Source: Diadema antillarum | Lineage: Eukaryota | Length of the DNA: 64,000 nt | Assembly (NCBI RefSeq): GCF_040938485.1 | Contig: NW_027271688.1 | Span: 620,001-684,000 of the forward strand | Reading direction: 5' to 3' | In this document: positions 7,115 through 59,867 of the stretch, piece after piece | Layout of the letters: each line of letters begins with the position of its first letter | Position numbering within the stretch: position 1 is the stretch's first letter | The notes under the pieces: model-generated | Database searches by the model: none | Told to the model about the DNA's origin: nothing | Seen by the model: the letters and a program-made list of their open reading frames with translations, nothing else | Made by a program: the position numbers and the translations under genes

Positions 7115-8015
7115 TTTGACGTTCATAAGCTAAGGGTCATCACCAGGATCAGTGTATCAGTAATGCACAGAATGCTTTGTTAAAAGATGACCAATAATCA
7201 CTATACTCATGGTCGCCATCTTCATGAAGATCAAGATCACCATCATCATCATCAGCAGTAGCAGCAGCAACATGCATCATCATTAGAGCTGTGCATACGC
7301 AGTAGCTGTCACCTATGGTTACTTATTAAATTATTCTGCTTTTCTTCCCCCAATTTCTATTAATCTTCCTCACTTTAACAGCCCCCACTTTTCCTTATTT
7401 TTGATAGTTGTATCTGCAGAAGCGTTTTTTTCCCTTTATTTCCAATCTATTAACACCTCGTTTTGCGAAACCCGGTTTCATTGTAACGTATCCAAAATGG
7501 TAGACAGTAATTATTTATCTTTGAATTCTCTTGAGATGTCGAAATATATCACGGCGTCTTGTACAGCTGAATTCTATTTCTTGGTAGGTTTGTGTTTTCT
7601 CTCGCGGTCTCCACATTCAGTTATATCAGTTGATTATTCTTAAGACGATTAAGTCATTGTAGTTGTTCATCTACTGTCTAACAACAATTCTTTATAGCGT
7701 TTATTTTCGACAGCGCAGCTCAAGCGACGCATTAAGCACCGATATTTCCCTCACCATAAAGGGGCACATTATCTTATGTGAAGGGATTACTGTATAGATA
7801 GTCATTCCAACCTCATTTACCTTCTCATCACATTCCTCACCTCAGACAATGTCTAAGAGACACCTTTTACATTATTGTTGTATTTTTGTTTCCTCTGGAG
7901 TATTTTTCTTCTACTTTTGTTTTGTGTGGTGAAGACGTTTAATCGCTTCCTCTTCGATCTCTCTTCACAGCAACATTATCTTGTCTCAGAACACAACAAA
8001 AAGAAAGAGTACGGA

Positions 8016-20272: not shown

Positions 20273-23200
20273 TTACTTCTCTTCGCACCAGCTGTTTTCT
20301 TTCCTCACCTATAAAAACAAAGCAAAAACATGACCAATGCACACCGAAATTTAGAGAAGTCACAAAATAAATAAAACATATGAGACATCTGCTTCAAAAT
20401 GTGATATATTTTTATGTTAGTGCTGCCGTAATTGACTATTGAAACTCGCTAACGACTATCAGATTTAAGCATATCTGGGAAGTGTCTTCTGACCCTTCTT
20501 AAATGTGAATCCGCACTGCACACTGTATAGCACAAAGTTCATCAATGTATGTCTGCTACCAAGAGGTTACTTGTATGTGACATAGCAGTTACGTATGATA
20601 GTTAGTCTGAAACAATTGAATTCGGTGCACATGTTCACTTCTTGTCGCTCTGAGTACTGCCAATGCCAGTACTGCCACGGACAATACCTTAGTACATGCA
20701 CCATGTTGAATGTTGTTCTTGGTTAAGAGTTGAACATCAAGCAGAGTATTTCTTTACACACTCATTGAAATTTATGGCATAGTATTTATATTTAAAACCT
20801 GAACATGTCTTGCCTGATGCACTGAAATTTACAGGACTTACTTTCAGTCATCGTTCACATGCAAACGCTGATGTGATCTCTTGCAATTGTGATAAAGCAG
20901 GTGAGGACATGAGCAATTAAGGTTTCTTCCATGTCATGTTACACCATTACAGTTATTCTCTATTATCAAAACCTAATCTTCTAATTGGAAAATCTTACAA
21001 TTGGTCGAAACACCTACACAAATACATACGCATGTATAAATTCATGTATATTTTGTGATATGCAGATAGCATTAATTGTTAAGTATTATAATTCTTATGT
21101 TTTCACTGTAAACTGACTGTATTTCAGCCTCTGAGCTGCTATTTTCTGTGCAATATACCACATCAATTCAATTCAATTATATGACCATATTTTCCCCACG
21201 CAAAATCCAACCTGTGGGACCGCAGATTTCCCATTCTCACTTTGGCAACTACCAGAGATGCAGAGCCTAACACTCACCTGTTCTTCTTCTGCTGGAGTGA
21301 AGTCATTTTTGATGTTGAACGTCTTGCGGATCTCCTCCGACGTCTTGCCCTTGATCATGTTGGCTACCGTCTTGCAGGTAGCGTCCAGGAGGCCTTTGAT
21401 GTCAAGATAGTTGGCAGCCTTTTTTGTGGAATAGCATGAAGAATGGAGAAGAAGAGTTCATGCATGTACAGGCCCATCATGAGTGTATAACACATATTAT
21501 GTTGAGTGTATAGAACATGTGTATAAATATGAATAAGCCAGTTCACAGTCCCACTGTGTACATGAGCAGAAAAAGGTCATGTGTTCAATCAGGCATGTTA
21601 GTTTGTAAAGTCACTGAGATAAGCATCCACAGTGAAAGGATTATTCATGTAATATTTATACTGTAAAAGTGGATAGTTTGGCGCTTGGCTGGGTAAGATG
21701 AATTTCACATTTTTTTTATTTCAAGGAATCAACACATTTATAAGTGAAAAATTATGATGTGCAAAAATATTTACTGTAAAACGAGGACTGTTCATGTGCA
21801 TTTTAATTTCGCGAATTTGGCGAGTGCCAAGGTTCGCGAAATTAAAATGCACACGAGAGTTCTTGTCTACACTATATGCATTGAACGCCAGTGGCAATTC
21901 GCGAAAATTTCATGCCACAAAAAAGGCCGTCTGCTCCAATTCGCGAAAATTTCATGCCGCAAATATATCATGTTTCACAGTATGCGTTAATATTTATTTT
22001 CACACTGATTTCTGATCACCCAAAATGCACAAATATTTCCACACAGCAAAAATCTCCACTTTTACAGTAAATGGTGCTCACTAGCACATCCACCCGAAAA
22101 CAGGCCTAGTATTCGATGATAATAATAATAGAAGAGGGTGTTAAAGCACTCAATACAACAAAATGAAATGGATGCTCGGCCAACTGTCAATTGACAGACC
22201 ATTCTAGTCATCTGGTCTACAAAAGTTCATTCTTTGTTTGAACATAAATTGTTATGTTGGGCAAGCTTATGCATCATGATTTTTTTTTTTGTTAAATCAA
22301 GTGACATACCTAAGCAGCTGAGAAAAAAGAGAAAGGTCATTTGCGCCAATGTGCAAACAAGCAGTGAACTGGCTTACAGATATATACTATCAAAAAGTCT
22401 GTTTTCAGATGGTTGACTGCACACTCCCATGACAAATTGGCAATATCTATGCAGTGCACACCAAATTGAAATAAAACATGGGCCATTTTCGTCAAAGTTA
22501 TCAACAGGAATGTTAGAGAAAAATGGTAATTTCTTTGATTCCATTTCACTTCTCCCATAAAAAGCACCTCTGCTCTCTCCAAGGCACGATACATCCCCCT
22601 GCAGCATCGACAGTGAAAATCTGCTCCATGTGCCATTTACCACTGTTCATAAATTTAGAAAAATCCAACAAAAGCACTATTATTTGGGATTAAAGTGGAC
22701 AATCATTCTTTGTTTTTCTACGAGACAGTGATATTCAGCCACAGGTATGGTACGTTAAAGTTAGAGGACACGACTGTATCATCCCCTGAACTATCTCCAA
22801 CCCCAGTGTCCTTTTCAAGTAAAGTAGAAGAACACAAATCCTTTTGTATTTTCTGTTTAATCTGAAAGAAATGTTCACAGTGTAATGTTTGTATTTGGTG
22901 ACTTAGATTGGTCCGACAAAGAGTGGCACTTCCCTCTGGGAATATGCTCTCTAAGGCCAAGACTGTGCAATGATTCATGCATTATGCATAATAAAATATG
23001 TTTGGGGGTGAGGGTCAAAAACACACCAGTATGAGCTCGAAGAGCGTGCCCTGGTCGACTTTGAGGAATTCCTGGTCGTGGGGGCAGATGTCGTCCGTCC
23101 TCTTCTCCCTGTTCTCGTCGTCTTCCGGTGGCGGAGGATCATCCTTGTGGTAGTGGCACCAGTGGAGGACCTTCTTTAAGATGGTGGAGTTGACGTTGGG

Positions 23201-50239: not shown

Positions 50240-51233
50240 TTAAGTGCAAATGCGTTAATCAATATTGTGTTTTGATTTAGACAAGATGTTGTTCACCGAT
50301 GTATGATCGGTACATGGTCGTGATCATTCATTCTTTCAGCAGCTAAGCTTAATTGTAGGCTCTAATGGTTTGATTGTATTATGTGCCATGTTTTAATAAC
50401 TGCTTTAAACACTGCTATTTTCAACTATATTGTTTCTGCCATATTCTTACTCCTTCATACTGTGTTTGCAAACTGTGTTTTTTTTTCTATGTTTCATGAA
50501 ATGCGATTTTATATTTATGAACTCGAATCGTACAGGACCTTGATGTGAAACATCGTCTACTTGTTGATCTTGTTATCATGTCAAAATATGTTGAGAAAAA
50601 ATATGTCGAAATAAATAATTTTTCTCAAACTGAAACATTTATGCAACTTAATAACTTTGTCGTCACTTGGTCGAACGGAAAACAGACTGCTGATAAATTA
50701 AGTTCTGACACCGATTACAGAAAAACGTAATCATTGTTACATATATAACTTGCCGAGTGCGAAATATGGCTCTCGACAAACACTGAACCATGCACACGGC
50801 TGCACATTGGATCACATGCTACCGTTTGATGTGATGTTAATTGGACAGATTAACCCCCCTCCCTGCCCCTCCATCCTCTATGGCGAACATTCAAAACGTT
50901 TCACATATCTACCTCCATTTGGTTAAGTTTGATCGAACGCCCTGGGTCTAATAATTAGCCTGACATGTTACGTGACGTCTAGAAGCTTGTCGCCAGATTT
51001 TGGCAACGATTCTTACAGATGATGCAGATTCGCAATAAAATGAGATGTGAAAGGGATAGCCTAAAAAAAAAATAAGCAAGAAACAGAATTAACTGCACTG
51101 AGTTCCTATACTAGTAAATTGTATCTTCAGGTAGCATTTCCTGTCATCCGCATTCGAAACATCTGATATCTCAGTCTCCATACTCGTTACTTATTTCATC
51201 TTCCTCATTGAGAGTGACTAGTCTGTAAATCAG

Positions 51234-51317
51234 TATATGAAGAGCTTGCTTCCAAAAGGCTCTAAATCCATTGAAAATGGTGGATTTAGCGCCTTTTGGA
51301 AGCAAGCTCTTCATGTA
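51234..51317. repeat. Near-perfect 84-nt inverted repeat (hairpin)
   Basis: ATGAAGAGCTTGCTTCCAAAAGGC-T-CTAAATCCA / TGGATTTAG-C-GCCTTTTGGAAGCAAGCTCTTCAT, 10-nt loop, TA at both ends. Confidence 0.9.
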
Positions 51318-52920
51318 TGATTATACACATGCACTATTCTACACCCATACGAGACCTATTTCCATGACTGAGTCACGATGACTAATCCCGGTCTAAAGGA
51401 GAATTATCCCAAGAAGAACGTTGGTATAAATCAGAGCAGGAGGATAAGAACAGCAAATCAGTAAAACCATTCACGGAATCGCATCTGAACGTAACCTTTC
51501 ACCTTATATAAAGAGTGAAGCTCCAAATTTATCCTGAAAATATATGAAATTTTGCATCTGAATATCCAATCGAACTCTCTGATCAATCAGCTCTAAAATG
51601 TCCTCGTAAAACCAAAGTAAACGCCATTTTCATAGTCGGCTCTTCCACAATCGGGCCCGATATTTACTGATGGCCTTACGCAAACATGACGGTATACCAC
51701 TTGTCCCACAGCTCGCACTAATTCAACTTTGATTGGGAGCGAGTGGATTTGTGTTGCTCTTGATGGGTGGAAGCTAGCTTGACACGCTGTTTGATTTCAA
51801 CATCCTCTCTGCAGAGTGATCAGAATGGAAACTTGATTGCGTGTACTCTAAACGTGATCTCTCACGTTTCTCTGTCGGGAATGGGAGGGGGCAGAACAAA
51901 ACACAGAAATATGGCATGAACTATGGTTTTCTTTCTTTTTTCATATGTTTCATATCTATGGTACAAAACAGGAAAAATAGTAAAGACAACGAGATACATC
52001 AATATTATAGTACCTTTGAATACTTCCATTTGAGAACATAAGGGTATAGTGCTTAATCTATTCTCTTGGGCTTTAATCTACTACTGACCAGCGATTCCTC
52101 CTCGCTCTATGGCTGCGTCCTCCCCTCCCCGTCTTATTCTGTCATCCTAAAGATATCATCGTGCATGAGCTGGCCATTAATCGTGACCACAGTGCTTCCG
52201 TAAGTCATTATTATGCACAATGTATCTACGGAACCACCATCTACAGTTTATTTTCCTCTGAATTATTATAACAATGTATGATTATTCTCGCCGTGCCGTC
52301 CAATAATTGTGCAAGCCAAACCTGACATCGCACCGCAGGAATCGTTAGTTGGTCACGAAAGAAAATAAATATTAGCACACTTCAAAGGGACATCACCACA
52401 TGTCAAAAATCCCATCCAAGTCTTGTGGTATTCTTGGGGTCCTCGATGCAATTCAAAACGTTTGCACAACCGTTGATCATTTTGGTCTTTCTTGAGCTTC
52501 AAGAAGATGCATTCATCGAAATGTAGTCTCTCTGTGGCTTTAAATTGCTCTTGTCTATTCATAATGATTACTTTCCCCATATATGTGTAATCATATTCTG
52601 TTATTTTTGTGTGTGCTTGTTTTGTTTTCCATGCTCCGTTGATGACTGCCGATACGTCGTGCCCTGGCGCAAAATATTTCCCTTTGTAAACAGTGGAGAT
52701 TCCATTTTATTCTATAGACACCGTGTAAGTGCTCCGTTTCCGTATACAGCAATATGCATGCACCAACGAAACACACTCGCAAAATTCCAAGGTGCCAAGT
52801 GAGAATTTAGAGAAACACTGATGCAGAATCTTTTGCTCACTGGAATGTGAAGTTTTCTGATGATTTATTTGACACAACATCTTATCACTTACAGCAACGA
52901 TGGAGTGTACAAGTGTACTT

Positions 52921-53010
52921 CACAAATAGAGAGCGTTGCAATTTCAAGACCAATTTTGACACTTGCGTGGTTTAAAAACTGGTCCATCATTATTTTCTCC
53001 ATGTCCTGTG
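52921..53010 (-). promoter_or_regulatory. SECIS element, type II, in the 3'UTR of the selenoprotein U gene
   Basis: Minus strand: A-UGA-U (52990-52986), 11-bp helix GGACCAGUUUU/AAAAUUGGUCU (2 GU), apical AAA (52973-52971), ministem CAC-GCAA-GUG, U-GA-A (52946-52943), lower helix AUGGAGA/UCUCUAU. AATAAA at 52869-52864. Confidence 0.88.
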
Positions 53011-54126
53011 AAATAAACTTGCACAAAATTCATCATTGTGAGCGACGACTGAGAACGTCTCAATTGGTGATAGATATACAGTCACGAATCGCAATATTAA
53101 CCAATAAACAGATACTAGTAATGTCATAAATAGAATACAATCGATTATGCACGATAATACATTTTACATGTACAAATAGGTATCATAGCTATTGTCAAGA
53201 CTGTAAGTTTATATCAAACGTCAAATGCCGCGGGTCTATAATTGCACTTTACCACGTATACAATAAGATTAACAACCATTCGTCTGACACATGTTACAGG
53301 CTAAATGGCCACCGCTTGAACCCTGTTCACACTGTACAACTTACCTGTTTATGTATTGATCGTTAGCAACATTGTTCATGTGTTTGTTGCTTTGTTGGTT
53401 AATGTATACGGACAATGTGTATCACCAAGGTAAACGTCAGCTTGACGTAGTGGCAACTGTTGAACAAAGTGCGCGTATAGATACTCACATGACTTATAAT
53501 TAATGTAAGCCTTATCTTAACGAACATCATTAGACACATAAAACACTGTTGAAAAGAGGAGACGCGACGTGATATGCATAGGTGAGTTCTGGTTTAGATG
53601 TAAAATAGATTACTCAATCTTTGTACTGCCACTCTGACGTGTAATACTGGTTGTAATTTCATGTATAATACTTGCATGTACATAAAAGACTTTTCCCGAG
53701 GACATGTACTACGCCGTATAACACGAGTCAAAATGCCAGAGCTAAAGTAGAATTATTTGTTACTTGAATACCAAGAATATAATACATAAATCCATGAAAT
53801 CAATTTCTACGTGTTCACTGGTTTTCTTTTTATCATTATTTCATACAAGTTACTACAGAATGATTTTATAGGCGGTGAGACCTTAATGTAGTTGAGGTAT
53901 GATCCGTTTACGGAACACGTTTCGAATCGTCGGTTTATTGAAGCTCTGTTGCGAAGAATCGTTAAGACACTTACCAAGGAAAGGGCTTGCTTTTTTTATT
54001 CCATTCATACTCAAACATTTAAAATGCATTCAAAATAACAAAAAATTGAGCAATGAATGTTTACAATTTAAGATGGAATAGGAATGTCAAATGTCGTTTT
54101 GAGTTGTGACATACTTACTTTCCTTA

Positions 54127-56518
54127 AGCGGGGTTCCCACTATCACGATTGGCGCCACGATTGAAATCGTGGCGCCAATCGTGAAGGAATCGTGGTGATC
54201 TTATCAAATCTTATCAGATCTTGACGTCAGTCGTGGCAATCGCATTAATCGTAGAAAAAATTTGGACGGTTCAAAAATTTTCTACGATTAACACGATTAA
54301 TTGTTGATCGTGATCATCGCATCAGGTTGTCTTGGATCGTATCAAAACGCAGCAAATCTCATCTAATCGTGCTTCTTAATCGTGTTGATCGGGATCGACT
54401 TTTTCACTTCCCTCCTACTTATATGTATATGTTTATTCTTCTTTTGTTTTATATTTGCCCTTATTTTGCTCCAAGATCGTACATATTTTGTATTCCGCGA
54501 GTATTAGATATTTTTATACATATCATTATTATTACTATACATAGTTTTACCATAACACAGACGCACAAAAAAGGGAGTTCCCCGTAATCAATTTGGGGTA
54601 ATTTTTTAACAAACAAAAAAATAGCAAAACTAATACGACTGTGGTATGTCTGCACCTATTGACTAAGGTCAGTATAAAAATGAGAATGATTTCCTGAATC
54701 GTGCATGAGTGAGCACACATCAAAGGCAAATTTGATTACTTTTTAGAACTACTTTTACTTTTTACTTTTTTTGTTGGGTTGTTTGTTTGTTTGTTTGTTT
54801 GTTTGTTTGTTGTTGTTGTTTTTTATTTTGGTGGGGGGGGGGTAAAGTATTGTTTCTTGTGTATTGCATATAATTATCAATCGCTGTTGTTGTTTCATCA
54901 TCCATCATTTGACCCCTTCACATCTATTGTGACACTTTTCATGTTTTGTTTTTTGTGGTTTCGGTTTTTTAGAGGAAAATAGCTGTGTCTACTCTCATTA
55001 AACTGCAAAATCCATTTAGTTTAAGATTGTTGTCAGATAATGCAGCTAAGATCTAGCAACCCATGTCAAGTGAGCATAAGAAAGAGTAGTTGTGTCTTCA
55101 TTGAGTAAGCATGTACACTTTAAAGATGGAGCATAAACTGCAAAACTGTACGGTTGATATTGAATAGAAGAGGGCTGGCACAATGAATCCTAAAACAACA
55201 CCACTGAAACATTCACCGGAAGCAGAATGTTTCTCACACCCCACGAAAACTTTTGTGACTTTTGAAAAGTGACCATTGTCACTCATACATGACTATAAAG
55301 ATCACTGTCATTTTTCACATAGAGGTTAGTTAATAAGTGTAGCAACACCCCAGCGAAATAATTTTGCTTCAAACTTATTTTGTGTTAAAAAGTGACTTTA
55401 TTTTAGGTGAGTTACTTCTCTGTTGTGTGTATATCGGTTTTGTTAAATACTGTTAAATAAAACTATTTATCAAGCCAAACCCACCAAACTTTCAATACCC
55501 CATGAGATAACGACATTTTGAAATACAAAGGCATATATACATACTATGCGAATATGAAATCAAACACATAAGCAATACTATAAGTTCGGTCAACTTTCTT
55601 ATACTGAGCCAGCATTCAAAAAGATCCAATCCTCTTTTTTAGCTTCCATTTCATCATATTTTCTTCATGTGTTTCAAAGGAAGGCGAACACCTTTTGTCT
55701 TTATCTTCTTCTTCTTTTTTTTTTTTTTTTTGGGGGGGGGGGGGGAGGGGGGGGGGGGGAGAGGGGGCAATGATTTGATCTTGCGTATGCAGTTTTTATT
55801 TTATTTTTTTTTGGGGGGGGGGGGGGGAGGGGGTGATGAGGACGAGCATGTCGATTCAATAATCTTTAGGTTGAATTAGAAGAGGGATTTTCTGACGTTG
55901 TGGCTGGCCTAGGCGCTGCTTTCTCTCTGATGATAACGTAATCGTCATTCGCAATATTGCAAAGGTCACGTTGTCATCATCCTCAATCAGTCAACCCTTG
56001 CCATCATCAATGGTTGTGGATAAATAGGCCTAATCACTCTTCAGAAGTTATAGAAATAATGAAAGACATTGTCAGTCGGACTATAATATTCCCATTCGGG
56101 TCCAATCGCGCCTTAAATCGAGTCGCTTTTGATCCCGATCGTGAAAGATATCGTATCTTATCTCAACAGCCCGCATTGCTTCGCGGTATTCGTACTAAAA
56201 CGTATCAGAACATAGCTGCACGCACCAGATCGGGGATCCCGATCGTAATGATCGTGTTAGATCGAAACCAATCGTAGACTCAATCGGAACAATCCTATTG
56301 GGTCATATTTGAATCGGAGACCACATCGTGATAGATCGTATTGCTTAAAATAGCCCAATCGTGACCATATCGCATCCCAGCGGACCAACACGTATTGACT
56401 CGCATAACCTCGTATCCAAACGTGAAATTTCAGACAAGTTCAACAAATTTTCCACGATCAGTTACGAATGTCCAATCGTGGCGTTCGCAAAGGATCGCAC
56501 GATAGTGGGAACCCCGCT
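54127..56518. mobile_element. 2.4-kb non-autonomous PIF/Harbinger-type element
   Basis: tta|AGCGGGGTTCCCACTATC ... GATAGTGGGAACCCCGCT|tta: perfect 18-bp TIRs and identical 3-bp TTA TSD. Subterminal ATCGT/ACGAT arrays at about 54145-54400 and 55960-56500. No transposase ORF seen. Confidence 0.85.
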
Positions 56519-56707
56519 TTACCAACGTATATTTTCCTTGAATTTGCTAAAATAGTATAACTGTGGCTGGCCATTCATTATTGTCAATCCATGAGTGCGA
56601 CACGGTAATGGATTCACATCGTTGAAGGTAATAACTCATTACGTCTAATTTCGGCAAATCAGGAACCTATCGGTAAATGTGTCTGTGATGACGTGCAGTG
56701 TATGAAA

Positions 56708-59700
56708 TTAATTCTCTGCTTCTGCGATTGGCCTGATCTTATTGGCTGCCTCGATGACGTTTTTGGTATCCACCGTATCTTCGAAGGTTTTGTTCGGATA
56801 CTCGTAGATGAGACCAGTGTCGCCGGGTCCGACGACGAAAATGCCCCCTAGAGTCCAGCCGTCACCTGTAGATGGTATAGGAATGGTTACAAAAGAACGT
56901 ATCTGCTGAAAGTTCATGTCATGTATTGCATCTTCACTGTCAATGTCATAATAACGAGTAGCGAATGCTCTGATCCTCTTCCATTGTTGACCCATCTCAT
57001 ATTCTATACTTTTCATTGTATCAGGGCTAATTCTGCAATTATCGACGGGCTGAAGGCCGCCGCACACTATACGACTTTTGGTCGCACGATTGACAGACCT
57101 TGAATCCGAAATAAATCATAGAATAGCCTCAGAATAAACACGTTTGTTTATTTCAGATCCAAAGTCGCTTTAAGTCGTGCGAAGGATAGCCGTATAGTGT
57201 GCTGTGGCCCTATAAACAAAGCTATCCGGAGTTTAACCATTATTGTACATTTGTATTACAAGAATCTGAAATCCCTATGCCCTGAAGACATTTCTGTGCA
57301 ACGGCAACGCGGTACGTGCCCAAGCAGTATATCGATTGACGTACACATTTTATAGTACACTGATTATCATGGAGGTAAAATTTCTTGCCGAAGTATACAA
57401 GCTACAAACGTAACTGTATCATACAGGTATACTGAAAGGTTAGCCTCAGAATTAAGTGCGTCATTATATCTGTTCTCTTGCATCAAGATGTCTTGCATGG
57501 CCGATTATCAACTGCGATGCTTGATTTAATCAAAACGGTGTCCTACGGGCAGTCGCCTTGTACCCCTTTAACATGTTTCAATGCTCTATAAGAATTCCAT
57601 CGCTACTTTGAATCAAAGGACACTTCAACCGAGAGCGAAACTAGGACTCCTGATTATTATTATCCTCAGACTCAAGTCCATTGCTAATATAATGTCTCCC
57701 CTTCGTCAATACACAATGAATTGATTTGCTAAAACAATCGAGCACAGTAAGACTCTGCGTCAACGCAAACTGTCAAATTATCACACAATGTCTCTCGTCG
57801 AGTGATGGAAGCGCATGATATTGCTTTCCCACATCGATGCAAGTCATGAAGCAGATTAATTCAACTATCATAATCATTAATTGGGTTGACGTCTTACCTT
57901 TTAAGTTGAGGGGGATTCCTTGCTTTCTGTACTTCCACCCCATAGAGAAGACACCTTTGTGGAATATGTCGAAGAACCCCCTCTTTCGAAACTTCGGCCC
58001 ATAGAACTTCATCTGTCGCGGAGGGAACGTTGGAACAAAGTGTATCATTTCTTTTGGTAAAAATCTCTGGGACGTGCTTATGTACAATGGTGCTCTAAGG
58101 AAATCAAATACTAGTACGATGTGTACGTGTACCACAATATTCATACACTGTCACTTGACTAGTAATGTAGTGTTGATCTTTACAGCATCTCGTAGAATAA
58201 ACCATGTAATGTGTACTGTTATGAGTTTTACCTCGATTTCGTTTCTGATGTCGAATTAAGTAAGAATACACGGAAACTGTTTCGCGTAAAATGATATTTC
58301 TACACACACACACACACATGCACAAGCTCATATCTTTGACAATGATGTGACTGTCAATCCACTGTTGTTGTCCACTTTGTCTTGTCACTGATGCATCATG
58401 AACATATAAACGTCTATACCCTTGAAACTCTTTGATGTCTTCTAGAGACCCTTTGATTTCGCTTGCAATCCCATGGGATTACGTATACACCTACAAAATC
58501 ATGATAAGTTTTAATGAGCAATGTGTACCTCTGTATCAAGAAAGACTTCTCCGTCGAAGAAAGGTAGGAAGTCCTGGTAACCCAGAGATTCCCGGAGGAC
58601 AGCGTACAGCTTTATGCCTCGCGCGTCCAGCTCGGGCTTGAGAGAGGAAACCGTACGGGCTTCCTACCAGAAATCACAGGAATATAAGCATAATTATGAT
58701 GGAATCATGCGTTGTTCACAGATTCGAACCGTGAAGGACCAATGTTTACAACCTAATTTCTTTCTTGATGCTTCCTATTTTAGTATGTCATACAAACACA
58801 GCTGCTAATTAACATTTTCCTTGTCATAACTTTTTCGTTACTATTCTCCATACATCACATCAGAATAACGATCATAAATTCTTCAAGTCATTTATATCCA
58901 AATCTTATACATGTACGTTTATCCACTGTTATANNNNNNNNNNNNNNNNNNNNNNNNNNNNNNNNNNNNNNNNNNNNNNNNNNNNNNNNNNNNNNNNNNN
59001 NNNNNNNNNNNNNNNNNNNNNNNNNNNNNNNNNNNNNNNNNNNNNNNNNNNNNNNNNNNNNNNNNNAAAGCTGCTCGTAAAGTTACGAACGACTTACGAG
59101 TGACTGGTGATCAGTTCTTGTGCTGAATATGGAAATTCTGATAAGTAGCACATCAGAACTGATCATCAGTCACTCGTTAGTCGTTCGTAACTTTACAAGC
59201 AGCTTTATGAAACACCCCCTGCTACTTCTACTTCTACTATCACCACTAGTATTACAACTGTTTCTATTCTACTAATAATAATAACAATCATAATTCAGTG
59301 CAATCCTCTTGCTTAAGGGAATATACTGAGAACTCTAAAACTGATCTCACGTTCAAAGGCCTCTGCCGAAATCATTGTATTCGAAGTCTAATATATGAAT
59401 TGGTGTGCTCTCACTGGTGTGTTGTCACTGTAACTTTACTACCTATACTTTTCTTTTTCTTTCAACTTCTCATTGCGTTTCTCTCTCCCTCTTTACTTCC
59501 CCTTCATAGGTAGTATAATCACCATCTCCTTCTTCATATTTTCTTGCTCCTTTCTTAAAATATCTTCTTGTTTGACATTATCATTAATAGCAGTCGTTGA
59601 CGTTCTCGCGATTATATGCTACGCACTCACCCCTTTGCACAAGGATCATCCAGGCCGCCTCACCGCCAGGACGACTGCACCGCTTTCCCGCCACAGATCC

Positions 59701-59867
59701 TTGGCCTTGAAGAGCTGCCTACCCTTCCCCGTGCCGCCATCCCCGCCGTCTGACTCGAGAAAGTTGAGATGAGTGAGGTTGGTGTTGCCTAGCAACTGGA
59801 GGGTGGCATCTGCTAGGTACGGTTCGTTGGCGCGATCCGGTACGGCAGAGGACGCAGATGCCGCCAT
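56708..59867 (-). CDS. SELENOU: Selenoprotein U / peroxiredoxin-like 2A (PRXL2A/FAM213A family, thioredoxin-like fold), 214 aa with Sec74
   Basis: Exons 59867-59631 (GCCATGG; ...FKAKDLWRESGAVVLAVRRPG-TGA-SLCKG|GTGAGT), 58663-58529 (EARTVSSLKPELDARGIKLYAVLRE...EVFLDTE), 58012-57898 (MKFYGP...LNLK), 56865-56708 (GDGWTLGGIFVVGPG...VIEAANKIRP...*). Collinear with vertebrate PRXL2A as I recall it (AVRRPGCFLCREEA...GGVFVVG). In-frame TGA at 59648-59646 plus the SECIS. Confidence 0.93.
58934..59066. other. Assembly gap (N run)
   Basis: 133 N, inside SelU intron 1. Confidence 1.
59067..59219. mobile_element. PIF/Harbinger-type MITE, inverted copy of 17823-17991 (left end in the gap)
   Basis: aaagctgctcgtaaagttacgaac...gttcgtaactttacaagcagctttatgaaacacccc; core is the reverse complement of the 17.8-kb copy. 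Confidence 0.8.

What the first reader, a model, noticed from the sequence alone, without database searches (positions are those of the whole stretch)
52921..53010. Canonical type-II SECIS 3.7 kb downstream of the SelU stop codon
All hallmarks are present in register: AUGA, U.U pair, 11-bp helix II, unpaired AAA, ministem with a GNRA (GCAA) loop, GA on the 3' side and a lower helix, followed by AATAAA about 75 nt past the core. It is on the correct strand to recode the UGA at 59648 and independently confirms the selenoprotein call.
Basis: partly seen in the sequence, partly recalled or inferred. Interest (0 to 1): 0.8.

Follow-up and report, generated by a model that had tools for sequence, protein, structure and literature searches.

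The report
SECIS hairpin of sea-urchin SelU gene
This is very probably the RNA hairpin that lets a Diadema sea-urchin selenoprotein U (PRXL2A) gene read its in-frame UGA as selenocysteine: a well-formed but ordinary example of a known signal, unusual only because a transposon has pushed it 3.7 kb past the stop codon.

Summary
The SelU stop (TAA 56710-56708) lies 3.7 kb upstream.

The pattern is not a chance match. It is expected 0.002 times per kb per strand in shuffles, and a perfect 11-bp helix never appeared in 100 shuffles. It is the only well-formed candidate downstream of the stop.

The gene is a four-exon SelU1/PRXL2A gene of a Diadema sea urchin with UGA at the UxxC motif. A spliced mRNA contig from another echinoid keeps the same in-frame UGA, so a SECIS must exist.

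The element is identical in the D. antillarum assembly. In a related genome ("organism B") the listed changes in its 5' half mostly keep base pairs.

Both relatives lack the 2.4-kb transposon at 54127-56521. The stop-to-SECIS spacing is about 1.3 kb without it and 1.9 kb in D. antillarum.

Two weaknesses remain. Rfam SECIS_1 gives only 15 bits against a cut-off of 35, although a control SelU mRNA was not reported at all. No RNA run was listed, so inclusion in the 3'UTR is inferred.

Verdict: a real SECIS and a new member of a known kind. Notes s1-229760 and s1-230014 cover the same window.

The parts
52921..53010 (-). Whole SECIS stem-loop (helix I, internal loop, core, helix II, AAA bulge, ministem and apical loop)
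   Evidence: MFE fold. Sequence. Identical in D. antillarum L001 15798-15887.
52987..52990 (-). 5' core AUGA, followed by U at 52986
   Evidence: Fits UGAN of the UGAN/KGAW consensus. Organism B has C at 52986, the variable N position.
52943..52946 (-). 3' core U-GA-A (fits KGAW). GA at 52945-52944 would form the tandem G.A/A.G with the GA of AUGA.
   Evidence: The non-Watson-Crick pairing itself is inferred.
52975..52985 (-). Helix II, 5' arm (GGACCAGUUUU)
   Evidence: 11/11 pairs with 52957-52947. Organism B has G>A at 52979, which turns a G.U into an A-U pair.
52947..52957 (-). Helix II, 3' arm (AAAAUUGGUCU)
52971..52973 (-). Unpaired AAA (AAR motif)
   Evidence: Unpaired in the MFE and centroid folds. 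Aligned to the AAA of the SECIS_1 consensus.
52960..52969 (-). Ministem CAC/GUG with GCAA tetraloop (helix III, the type-II feature)
   Evidence: Aligned to the ministem of the SECIS_1 consensus.
52864..52869 (-). AATAAA, candidate poly(A) signal 75 nt after the core GA
   Evidence: Its use is not tested.
59631..59867 (-). SelU exon 1 coding part (ATG 59867-59865). The Sec codon UGA is at 59648-59646 in the motif VRRPG-U-SLC, and the donor GTGAGT starts at 59630.
   Evidence: The same junction SLCKG|EARTV is seen in mRNA contig L002.
58529..58663 (-). SelU exon 2
57898..58012 (-). SelU exon 3
56708..56865 (-). SelU exon 4 with stop TAA 56710-56708
   Evidence: The 52-aa query region covering it (residues 84-135 of the 56711-57115 frame) is 96% identical to D. 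antillarum PRXL2A P0001.
54127..56521 (.). 2.4-kb high-copy DNA transposon between stop and SECIS, with terminal inverted repeats and a 3-bp TTA target duplication
   Evidence: Inverted repeat I1. Word depth in the thousands, and an organism B contig that joins 54123 to 56519. D. antillarum L001 is continuous across the site with a 3-nt overlap.

Best explanation
The stem-loop at 53010-52921 (minus strand) is the SECIS element of the SelU1/PRXL2A gene of a Diadema sea urchin.

Proposed mechanism:
1. The element is transcribed as the distal part of the 3'UTR.
2. It folds into a type-II SECIS. The AUGA/UGAA core forms a kink-turn with tandem G.A/A.G pairs.
3. SECIS-binding protein 2 binds that core and recruits eEFSec with Sec-tRNA(Sec).
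4. The ribosome then reads UGA 59648-59646, in the redox motif U-S-L-C, as selenocysteine instead of stopping.

Shown here: the sequence and predicted fold, their non-random character, the uniqueness of the candidate downstream of the stop, conservation in two related genomes, and the in-frame UGA in a related mRNA.

Inferred: inclusion in the mature mRNA, protein binding and recoding.

In this genome a 2.4-kb transposon raised the stop-to-SECIS spacing from about 1.3 kb to 3.7 kb.
For: (1) All parts are in register, and the unconstrained MFE fold gives the SECIS architecture.

(2) The core is UGAU/UGAA, which fits the UGAN/KGAW consensus (PMC3753652).

(3) Chance expectation is 0.002 per kb per strand for at least 10 of 11 pairs. 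An 11/11 helix was never seen in 100 shuffles.

(4) It is the only well-formed candidate from the stop down to 50 kb, in both the rigid and the bulge-tolerant scans. It is also the only one in the D. antillarum locus.

(5) Rfam SECIS_1 aligns helix II, AAA and the ministem at 15 bits, E = 3.3 over 4227 families in 462 nt. By my arithmetic that is about 8e-4 for this one family, or about 6e-3 for the whole 3.7-kb UTR strand.

(6) A SECIS is required. The gene has the conserved VRRPG-U-SLC motif. Coding conservation continues after the UGA in D. antillarum and in spliced mRNA contig L002, which keeps the UGA.

(7) The element is 100% identical in D. antillarum.

(8) In organism B, seven changes are listed in the 5' half. 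Three fall in predicted pairs and keep them: G.U>A-U in helix II, and G.U>A-U and A-U>G.U in helix I. One is at the variable N after AUGA. AUGA and AAA are intact. With those seven changes put into the window sequence the hairpin still folds the same way, at -13.3 against -13.2 kcal/mol.

(9) No gene is annotated between SelU and the convergent GPCR gene in L001.

(10) L002 carries 863 nt of 3'UTR without a SECIS, so a distal SECIS is normal for this gene in echinoids.
Against: - Rfam SECIS_1 is far below its gathering score (15 against 35 bits), and its local alignment omits the core. Nothing was reported at the gathering threshold or at E<=10 on 11 kb.
- Helix II is one pair longer than the Rfam consensus.
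- No RNA run was listed, so it is not shown that the mRNA extends to 52.9 kb.
- AATAAA hexamers precede the SECIS on the sense strand: two in unique UTR sequence (54000, 53939) and five inside the transposon.
- The 3' half of the element in organism B is not documented, because the table of differences is truncated.
- The D. antillarum copy is too similar to show covariation.
- One organism B change, A>U just before AUGA, breaks a pair of the short 4-bp helix in the MFE fold.
Confidence: 0.85

Rival explanations
1. The true SECIS of this gene lies elsewhere, for example in a bulged or non-canonical form in the UTR, in a further 3' exon, or in sequence hidden by the N gap. The hairpin at 52.9 kb would then be a bystander.
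For: Rfam does not endorse the candidate. My scans use simple rules and could miss unusual SECIS forms. AATAAA signals at 54000 and 53939 could end transcripts before 53 kb.
Against: - No other candidate with a single stem, an AA bulge and a core was found from 56.7 to 50 kb.
- The N run is in intron 1, upstream of the stop.
- The hairpin is far better than chance.
- It is conserved in two related genomes, with mostly pair-preserving changes in organism B.
Confidence: 0.07
2. The hairpin is a SECIS relic or is crippled in this haplotype. The transposon, with its poly(A) signals and A-run, ends most transcripts early, so the allele makes a truncated 78-aa product or is degraded by nonsense-mediated decay.
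For: - A 2.4-kb insertion lies between stop and SECIS, carrying five sense-strand AATAAA hexamers and a long A-run.
- Both relatives lack the insertion.
Against: - All four exons are intact and the splice sites are canonical.
- The SECIS is identical to the D. antillarum copy.
- From general knowledge, SECIS elements work several kb from the UGA, as in DIO2.
- There are no expression data either way.
Confidence: 0.06
3. Chance stem-loop in AT-rich intergenic DNA with no function.
For: Low Rfam score. The fold z-score is only -2.16.
Against: - The expected count in 3.7 kb is about 0.007 for the looser pattern and below 3e-4 for the observed one.
- It sits on the correct strand downstream of a gene that needs a SECIS.
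- The other two pattern matches in the window are a T-run/A-run artefact (22276) and a site that does not fold (7140, z +1.4).
Confidence: 0.02

Closest known systems
Eukaryotic SECIS element, type II (Rfam RF00031 SECIS_1; SECISearch3 model of Mariotti et al. 2013, PMC3753652)
   Same: - AUGA/GA kink-turn core that fits UGAN/KGAW.
- Helix II, unpaired AAA, ministem and small apical loop, and helix I.
- Location downstream of the coding sequence, on the same strand as a gene with an in-frame UGA.
   Different: - It scores 15 bits against a gathering score of 35 in Rfam.
- Helix II is one pair longer than the Rfam consensus.
- It lies 3.7 kb from the stop because of a transposon, about 1.3 kb without it.
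SelU1 / PRXL2A (FAM213A, C10orf58) selenoproteins of fish, birds, platypus and invertebrates (PMC3473315, PMC2397514)
   Same: - AhpC-TSA_2 (PF13911) fold.
- Sec at the first position of the UxxC motif, after the conserved VRRPG.
- Jiang et al. report that all invertebrate SelU1 members they examined carry Sec.
   Different: - This is a Diadema orthologue whose public annotation (P0001) avoids the UGA by using an upstream splice donor.
- The S. purpuratus PRXL2A entry P0003 shows Cys at this position.
SECIS of a SelU mRNA from a marine metatranscriptome (L003/L004, JGI)
   Same: A SelU mRNA with an in-frame UGA in VVRRPG-U-NLC and an AUGA...AAA...GA stem-loop in the 3'UTR.
   Different: - That one looks like type I, with an open 13-nt apical loop.
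- Its helix II has 9 positions (8 of them paired), and the poly(A) run begins about 100 nt further on.
- There is no sequence similarity to the Diadema element.

Membership tests
Eukaryotic SECIS (type II) | 5' core (A/G)UGAN | tested here: met
   AUGAU at 52990-52986. AUGAC in organism B.
Eukaryotic SECIS (type II) | 3' core KGAW placed so that GA faces the GA of UGA (tandem G.A/A.G quartet) | tested here: met
   UGAA at 52946-52943 is directly opposite across the 11-bp helix. Only the sequence register was tested, not the non-canonical pairing.
Eukaryotic SECIS (type II) | Helix II of constrained length between the core and the conserved unpaired As | tested here: met
   11 contiguous pairs plus U.U, with 12 nt between AUGAN and AAA. 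This is one pair longer than the Rfam consensus, which is why the model alignment stops short of the core.
Eukaryotic SECIS (type II) | Unpaired AAR (or CC) at the top of helix II | tested here: met
   AAA at 52973-52971 is unpaired in the MFE and centroid folds.
Eukaryotic SECIS (type II) | Additional helix III (ministem) closing a small apical loop | tested here: met
   CAC/GUG with a GCAA loop, aligned to the ministem of SECIS_1.
Eukaryotic SECIS (type II) | Helix I below an internal loop | tested here: met
   12 pairs, 53010-52996 with 52932-52921, plus a 4-bp helix next to the core. Two organism B changes keep helix I pairs.
Eukaryotic SECIS (type II) | Reaches the curated covariance-model score (Rfam gathering 35 bits) | tested here: not met
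   15 bits, partial alignment. In the control, the stem-loop of a polyadenylated SelU mRNA (L003) was not reported at E<=10 in a search of equal size. This criterion is therefore insensitive for this gene family.
Eukaryotic SECIS (type II) | Lies in the 3'UTR of an mRNA with an in-frame Sec-UGA | tested here: inconclusive
   It is on the same strand, downstream of the stop, with no gene between. No RNA run was listed, so transcript extent is unknown.
Eukaryotic SECIS (type II) | Binds SBP2 and supports UGA recoding | not testable with these tools
   Needs a gel shift and a readthrough reporter.
SelU1 / PRXL2A selenoprotein | AhpC-TSA_2 (PF13911) domain with a U/CxxC redox motif after VRRPG | tested here: met
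   The window encodes VRRPG-U-SLC. The orthologue P0001 carries PF13911 and is 96% identical over the 52-aa query region covering exon 4. The S. purpuratus homologue has VRRPGCSLC.
SelU1 / PRXL2A selenoprotein | [quoted passage not shown] | tested here: met
   mRNA contig L002 reads PG-UGA-SLCKGEARTV, with 70-83% nucleotide identity in all four exons. L003 and L004 show the same pattern.

The most novel reading that the evidence does not exclude
The 2.4-kb transposon between stop codon and SECIS is a recent insertion that both relatives lack. It may be polymorphic within this species, which was not tested. It nearly triples the stop-to-SECIS spacing and adds sense-strand poly(A) signals. If carriers make less full-length SelU, or shift to SECIS-less truncated transcripts, this would be a natural allele showing how a transposon in a 3'UTR can switch selenocysteine decoding on or off.
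Probability: 0.15. Interest if true: 0.45.

Novelty: new member of a known kind. Interest (0 to 1): 0.25.

Why it matters
The element completes the evidence that Diadema SelU1/PRXL2A is a selenoprotein. The public D. antillarum annotation misses this: its model skips the UGA and loses the redox motif.

It adds an echinoid type-II SECIS that the Rfam model does not recognise, which is useful for retraining SECIS models.

It also marks a locus where a transposon separates a SECIS from its coding sequence. Beyond that, it is an expected feature of a known gene family.

Tried and rejected
- Rfam at the gathering threshold on the whole window and at E<=10 on 50-61 kb gave no SECIS. Only a 231-nt search gave a partial 15-bit match.
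- RNA evidence: the look-up of sequencing runs listed no RNA holder, either for 52400-58399 (kind rna) or for 52800-57150 (kind any). The four runs laid were all contigs and, by their intron coverage and repeat depth, behaved as DNA.
- The exact-protein look-up of the exon 1 product found nothing. S. purpuratus P0003 has no contig on record.
- L002 does not reach a SECIS within 863 nt of 3'UTR, and its UTR does not align to the window.
- Rfam on the SelU loci L003, L004 and L005 gave no SECIS. I used this as a sensitivity control.
- The second pattern match at 7140 (minus) does not fold (z +1.4) and was rejected. The match at 22276 (plus) is a T-run/A-run artefact.
- A covariation test was not possible. 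D. antillarum is identical, and only part of organism B's copy is documented.
- I did not use the third word search or the large HMMER search. The protein family is not in doubt.

Full report
**What is at the coordinates**

On the minus strand, 53010-52921 reads CACAGGACAUGGAGAAAAUA-AUGA-U-GGACCAGUUUU-UAAAC-CAC-GCAA-GUG-UC-AAAAUUGGUCU-U-GA-A-AUUGCAACGCUCUCUAUUUGUG.

- a lower helix of 12 pairs with a 3-nt bulge;
- a short 4-bp helix;
- an internal loop holding the GA of AUGA and the 3' UGAA;
- an uninterrupted 11-bp helix II (two G.U pairs);
- an unpaired UAAAC;
- a 3-bp ministem closing a GCAA loop.

The energy is -22 kcal/mol, z = -2.16, and 4 of 200 shuffles fold as well.

In window coordinates:

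| Feature | Position |
|---|---|
| AUGA | 52990-52987 |
| U.U | 52986 / 52946 |
| AAA | 52973-52971 |
| GA | 52945-52944 |
| AATAAA | 52869-52864 (75 nt after GA) |

**Is it more than chance?**

I wrote a rigid SECISearch-like pattern: ATGA, N, at least 10 of 11 ungapped pairs, AA within 4 nt of the helix end, N, GA.
- In 100 dinucleotide-preserving shuffles of the window, both strands together gave 0.25 matches per shuffle (0.002 per kb per strand). None had 11/11 pairs.
- The real window has three matches: this one, a T-run/A-run artefact at 22276, and a site at 7140 that does not fold (z +1.4).
- A second, bulge-tolerant scan used constrained folding of every [AG]TGA...GA pair from 56720 down to 50000 on the minus strand. 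It found no other single-stem candidate. The remaining hits were transposon hairpins or multibranched folds.

**The gene it would serve**

The minus strand carries a four-exon gene:

| Part | Coordinates |
|---|---|
| Exon 1 (ATG 59867) | ends 59631 |
| Exon 2 | 58663-58529 |
| Exon 3 | 58012-57898 |
| Exon 4 | 56865-56708 |
| Stop TAA | 56710-56708 |

Exon 1 reads ...AVVLAVRRPG-UGA-SLCKG|gtgagt, so the UGA (59648-59646) replaces the first Cys of the PRXL2A/SelU CxxC motif.

A word search with the region covering exon 4 found "peroxiredoxin-like 2A [Diadema antillarum]" at 96% identity, with Pfam PF13911. The window therefore comes from a Diadema sea urchin.

That public protein (P0001) joins ...AVVLA directly to EARTV. 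The annotation uses an upstream donor and so skips the UGA and the redox motif.

Independent proof of the Sec reading comes from L002. This is a 1,763-nt intron-less Logan contig, evidently a spliced mRNA, from run SRR6173504 and a more distant echinoid. It reads CCT GGA TGA TCT TTG TGT AAG GGG GAA GCC, which is PG-U-SLCKG-EA. It matches all four window exons at 70-83% nucleotide identity.

Two polyadenylated metatranscriptome SelU mRNAs (L003, L004) show the same UGA.

Jiang et al. 2012 (PMC3473315) report that all invertebrate SelU1 members they examined carry Sec. The gene is therefore a selenoprotein gene, and a SECIS must exist downstream.

**Comparative evidence on the element**

The D. 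antillarum locus L001 (GCA_040938485.1) aligns to the window at 98.3% from 53972 to 46029. In the 401 nt around the element 400 positions are identical, and the element itself is identical. This shows presence but gives no covariation.

A more divergent genome, coded "organism B" (run X4, Logan contigs), has a single-copy contig across 52928-53972. It shows about 7% substitutions and many indels. Seven changes are listed in 52979-53005:
- 52979 (RNA G32>A) turns the G.U pair of helix II into A-U.
- 52986 (U>C) is the variable N after AUGA.
- 53000 (G>A) and 53002 (A>G) turn G.U into A-U and A-U into G.U in helix I.
- 52995 and 53005 fall in unpaired positions.
- 52991 (A>U) breaks one pair of the short 4-bp helix.

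AUGA and AAA are untouched. The hairpin with these changes folds identically, at -13.3 against -13.2 kcal/mol.

The table of differences is truncated. The 3' half in organism B is therefore not documented, and I do not claim it is conserved.

**Spacing and the transposon**

The interval 54127-56521 is a high-copy element:
- Its word depth is in the thousands, against about 50-70 in the flanks.
- It has 29-nt terminal inverted repeats (I1).
- It has a TTA target duplication.

An organism B contig joins 54123 directly to 56519. D. antillarum is continuous across the same point with a 3-nt overlap. The insertion is therefore specific to this genome or haplotype.

Without it the AUGA lies about 1.3 kb from the stop. 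In D. antillarum the distance is 1.88 kb, because of a different 562-bp insertion at window 53972/53976.

L002 carries 863 nt of 3'UTR without any SECIS. A distal SECIS therefore seems normal for this gene in echinoids.

No gene is annotated between SelU and the convergent GPCR gene (7tm_1), which corresponds to about 48.3-49.4 kb of the window.

**The Rfam result and its weight**

Rfam reported nothing at the gathering threshold and no SECIS at E<=10 over 11 kb.

On 231 nt, SECIS_1 aligned helix II, AAA, the ministem and the loop (model positions 15-51) at 15 bits, E = 3.3, against a gathering score of 35.

That E-value is scaled by 4227 families. For the single prior hypothesis "SECIS_1 on this strand of the 3.7-kb UTR" it corresponds to roughly 6e-3 (my arithmetic).

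The alignment stops before the core, apparently because helix II is one pair longer than the consensus.

As a sensitivity control I searched the 3'UTR of the polyadenylated SelU mRNA L003. It has an evident AUGA-helix-AAA-GA stem-loop at about 913-950. In a search of the same size, SECIS_1 was not reported at all. The Rfam negative therefore says little for this gene family.

The core sequence UGAU/UGAA fits the UGAN/KGAW consensus of Mariotti et al. 2013 (PMC3753652).

**What is not shown**

No RNA run of this organism was listed, and the runs laid were contigs. Transcript extent, poly(A) site use and expression are therefore unknown.

Sense-strand AATAAA hexamers occur before the SECIS at 54000 and 53939 in unique sequence, and five times inside the transposon.

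SBP2 binding and recoding are inferred from what is established about eukaryotic SECIS elements.

**Verdict**

This is very probably (about 0.85) the functional type-II SECIS of a Diadema SelU1/PRXL2A gene.

It is a new member of a well-known kind, not a new mechanism. The only unusual aspect is the transposon that now separates it from the coding sequence, which note s1-230014 already raised for this window. Note s1-229760 raised the UGA itself.

Noticed in passing
window 54127-56521: A 2.4-kb DNA transposon with about 29-nt terminal inverted repeats and a TTA target duplication. It has no ORF above 106 aa, and its word depth in organism B is in the thousands. The site is empty in D. antillarum and in an organism B contig.
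   Followed up: partly
L001 10001-13937 (D. antillarum GCA_040938485.1) / protein P0001: The public 'peroxiredoxin-like 2A' model joins ...AVVLA to EARTV. It skips VRRPG-U-SLCKG, so the selenocysteine and the redox motif are missing from the annotation.
   Followed up: yes
window 53972-53976 versus L001 14273-14835: D. antillarum has a 562-bp insertion in the same 3'UTR interval that the window lacks. The UTR has therefore been hit independently in both genomes.
   Followed up: no
window 61000-46000 versus L001: Identity to D. antillarum is uneven. It is 84-94% across the promoter and gene body (60995-56519) but 97-98% from 54126 down to 46029. Divergent haplotypes or a mixed ancestry of the region could explain this.
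   Followed up: no
window 51228-51322: A near-perfect palindromic hairpin of about 95 nt scores 41-48 bits against several unrelated miRNA families on both strands, all below their gathering scores. It looks like a MITE-type inverted repeat rather than a known miRNA.
   Followed up: no
window 57064-57200 (intron 3): A short inverted-repeat element (33-nt arms, 71 nt apart) with word depth above 10,000 in organism B. It is probably a MITE.
   Followed up: no
protein P0003 (S. purpuratus PRXL2A, UniRef A0A7M7NEU3): It shows VRRPGCSLC, with Cys where Diadema and the L002 species have Sec. This could be a Sec/Cys exchange within echinoids or an annotation choice. No contig was on record to check the codon.
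   Followed up: partly
L003 895-975 and L004 (JGI metatranscriptomes 3300018641, 3300019126): These are complete polyadenylated SelU mRNAs with an in-frame UGA and a type-I-like SECIS, with the poly(A) run beginning about 100 nt further on. Rfam SECIS_1 misses this SECIS, so they are useful positive controls.
   Followed up: partly
window 7140-7086 (minus): An ATGA/AA/GA pattern with 10 of 11 pairs that does not fold as a hairpin (z +1.4). It is taken as a chance match.
   Followed up: yes
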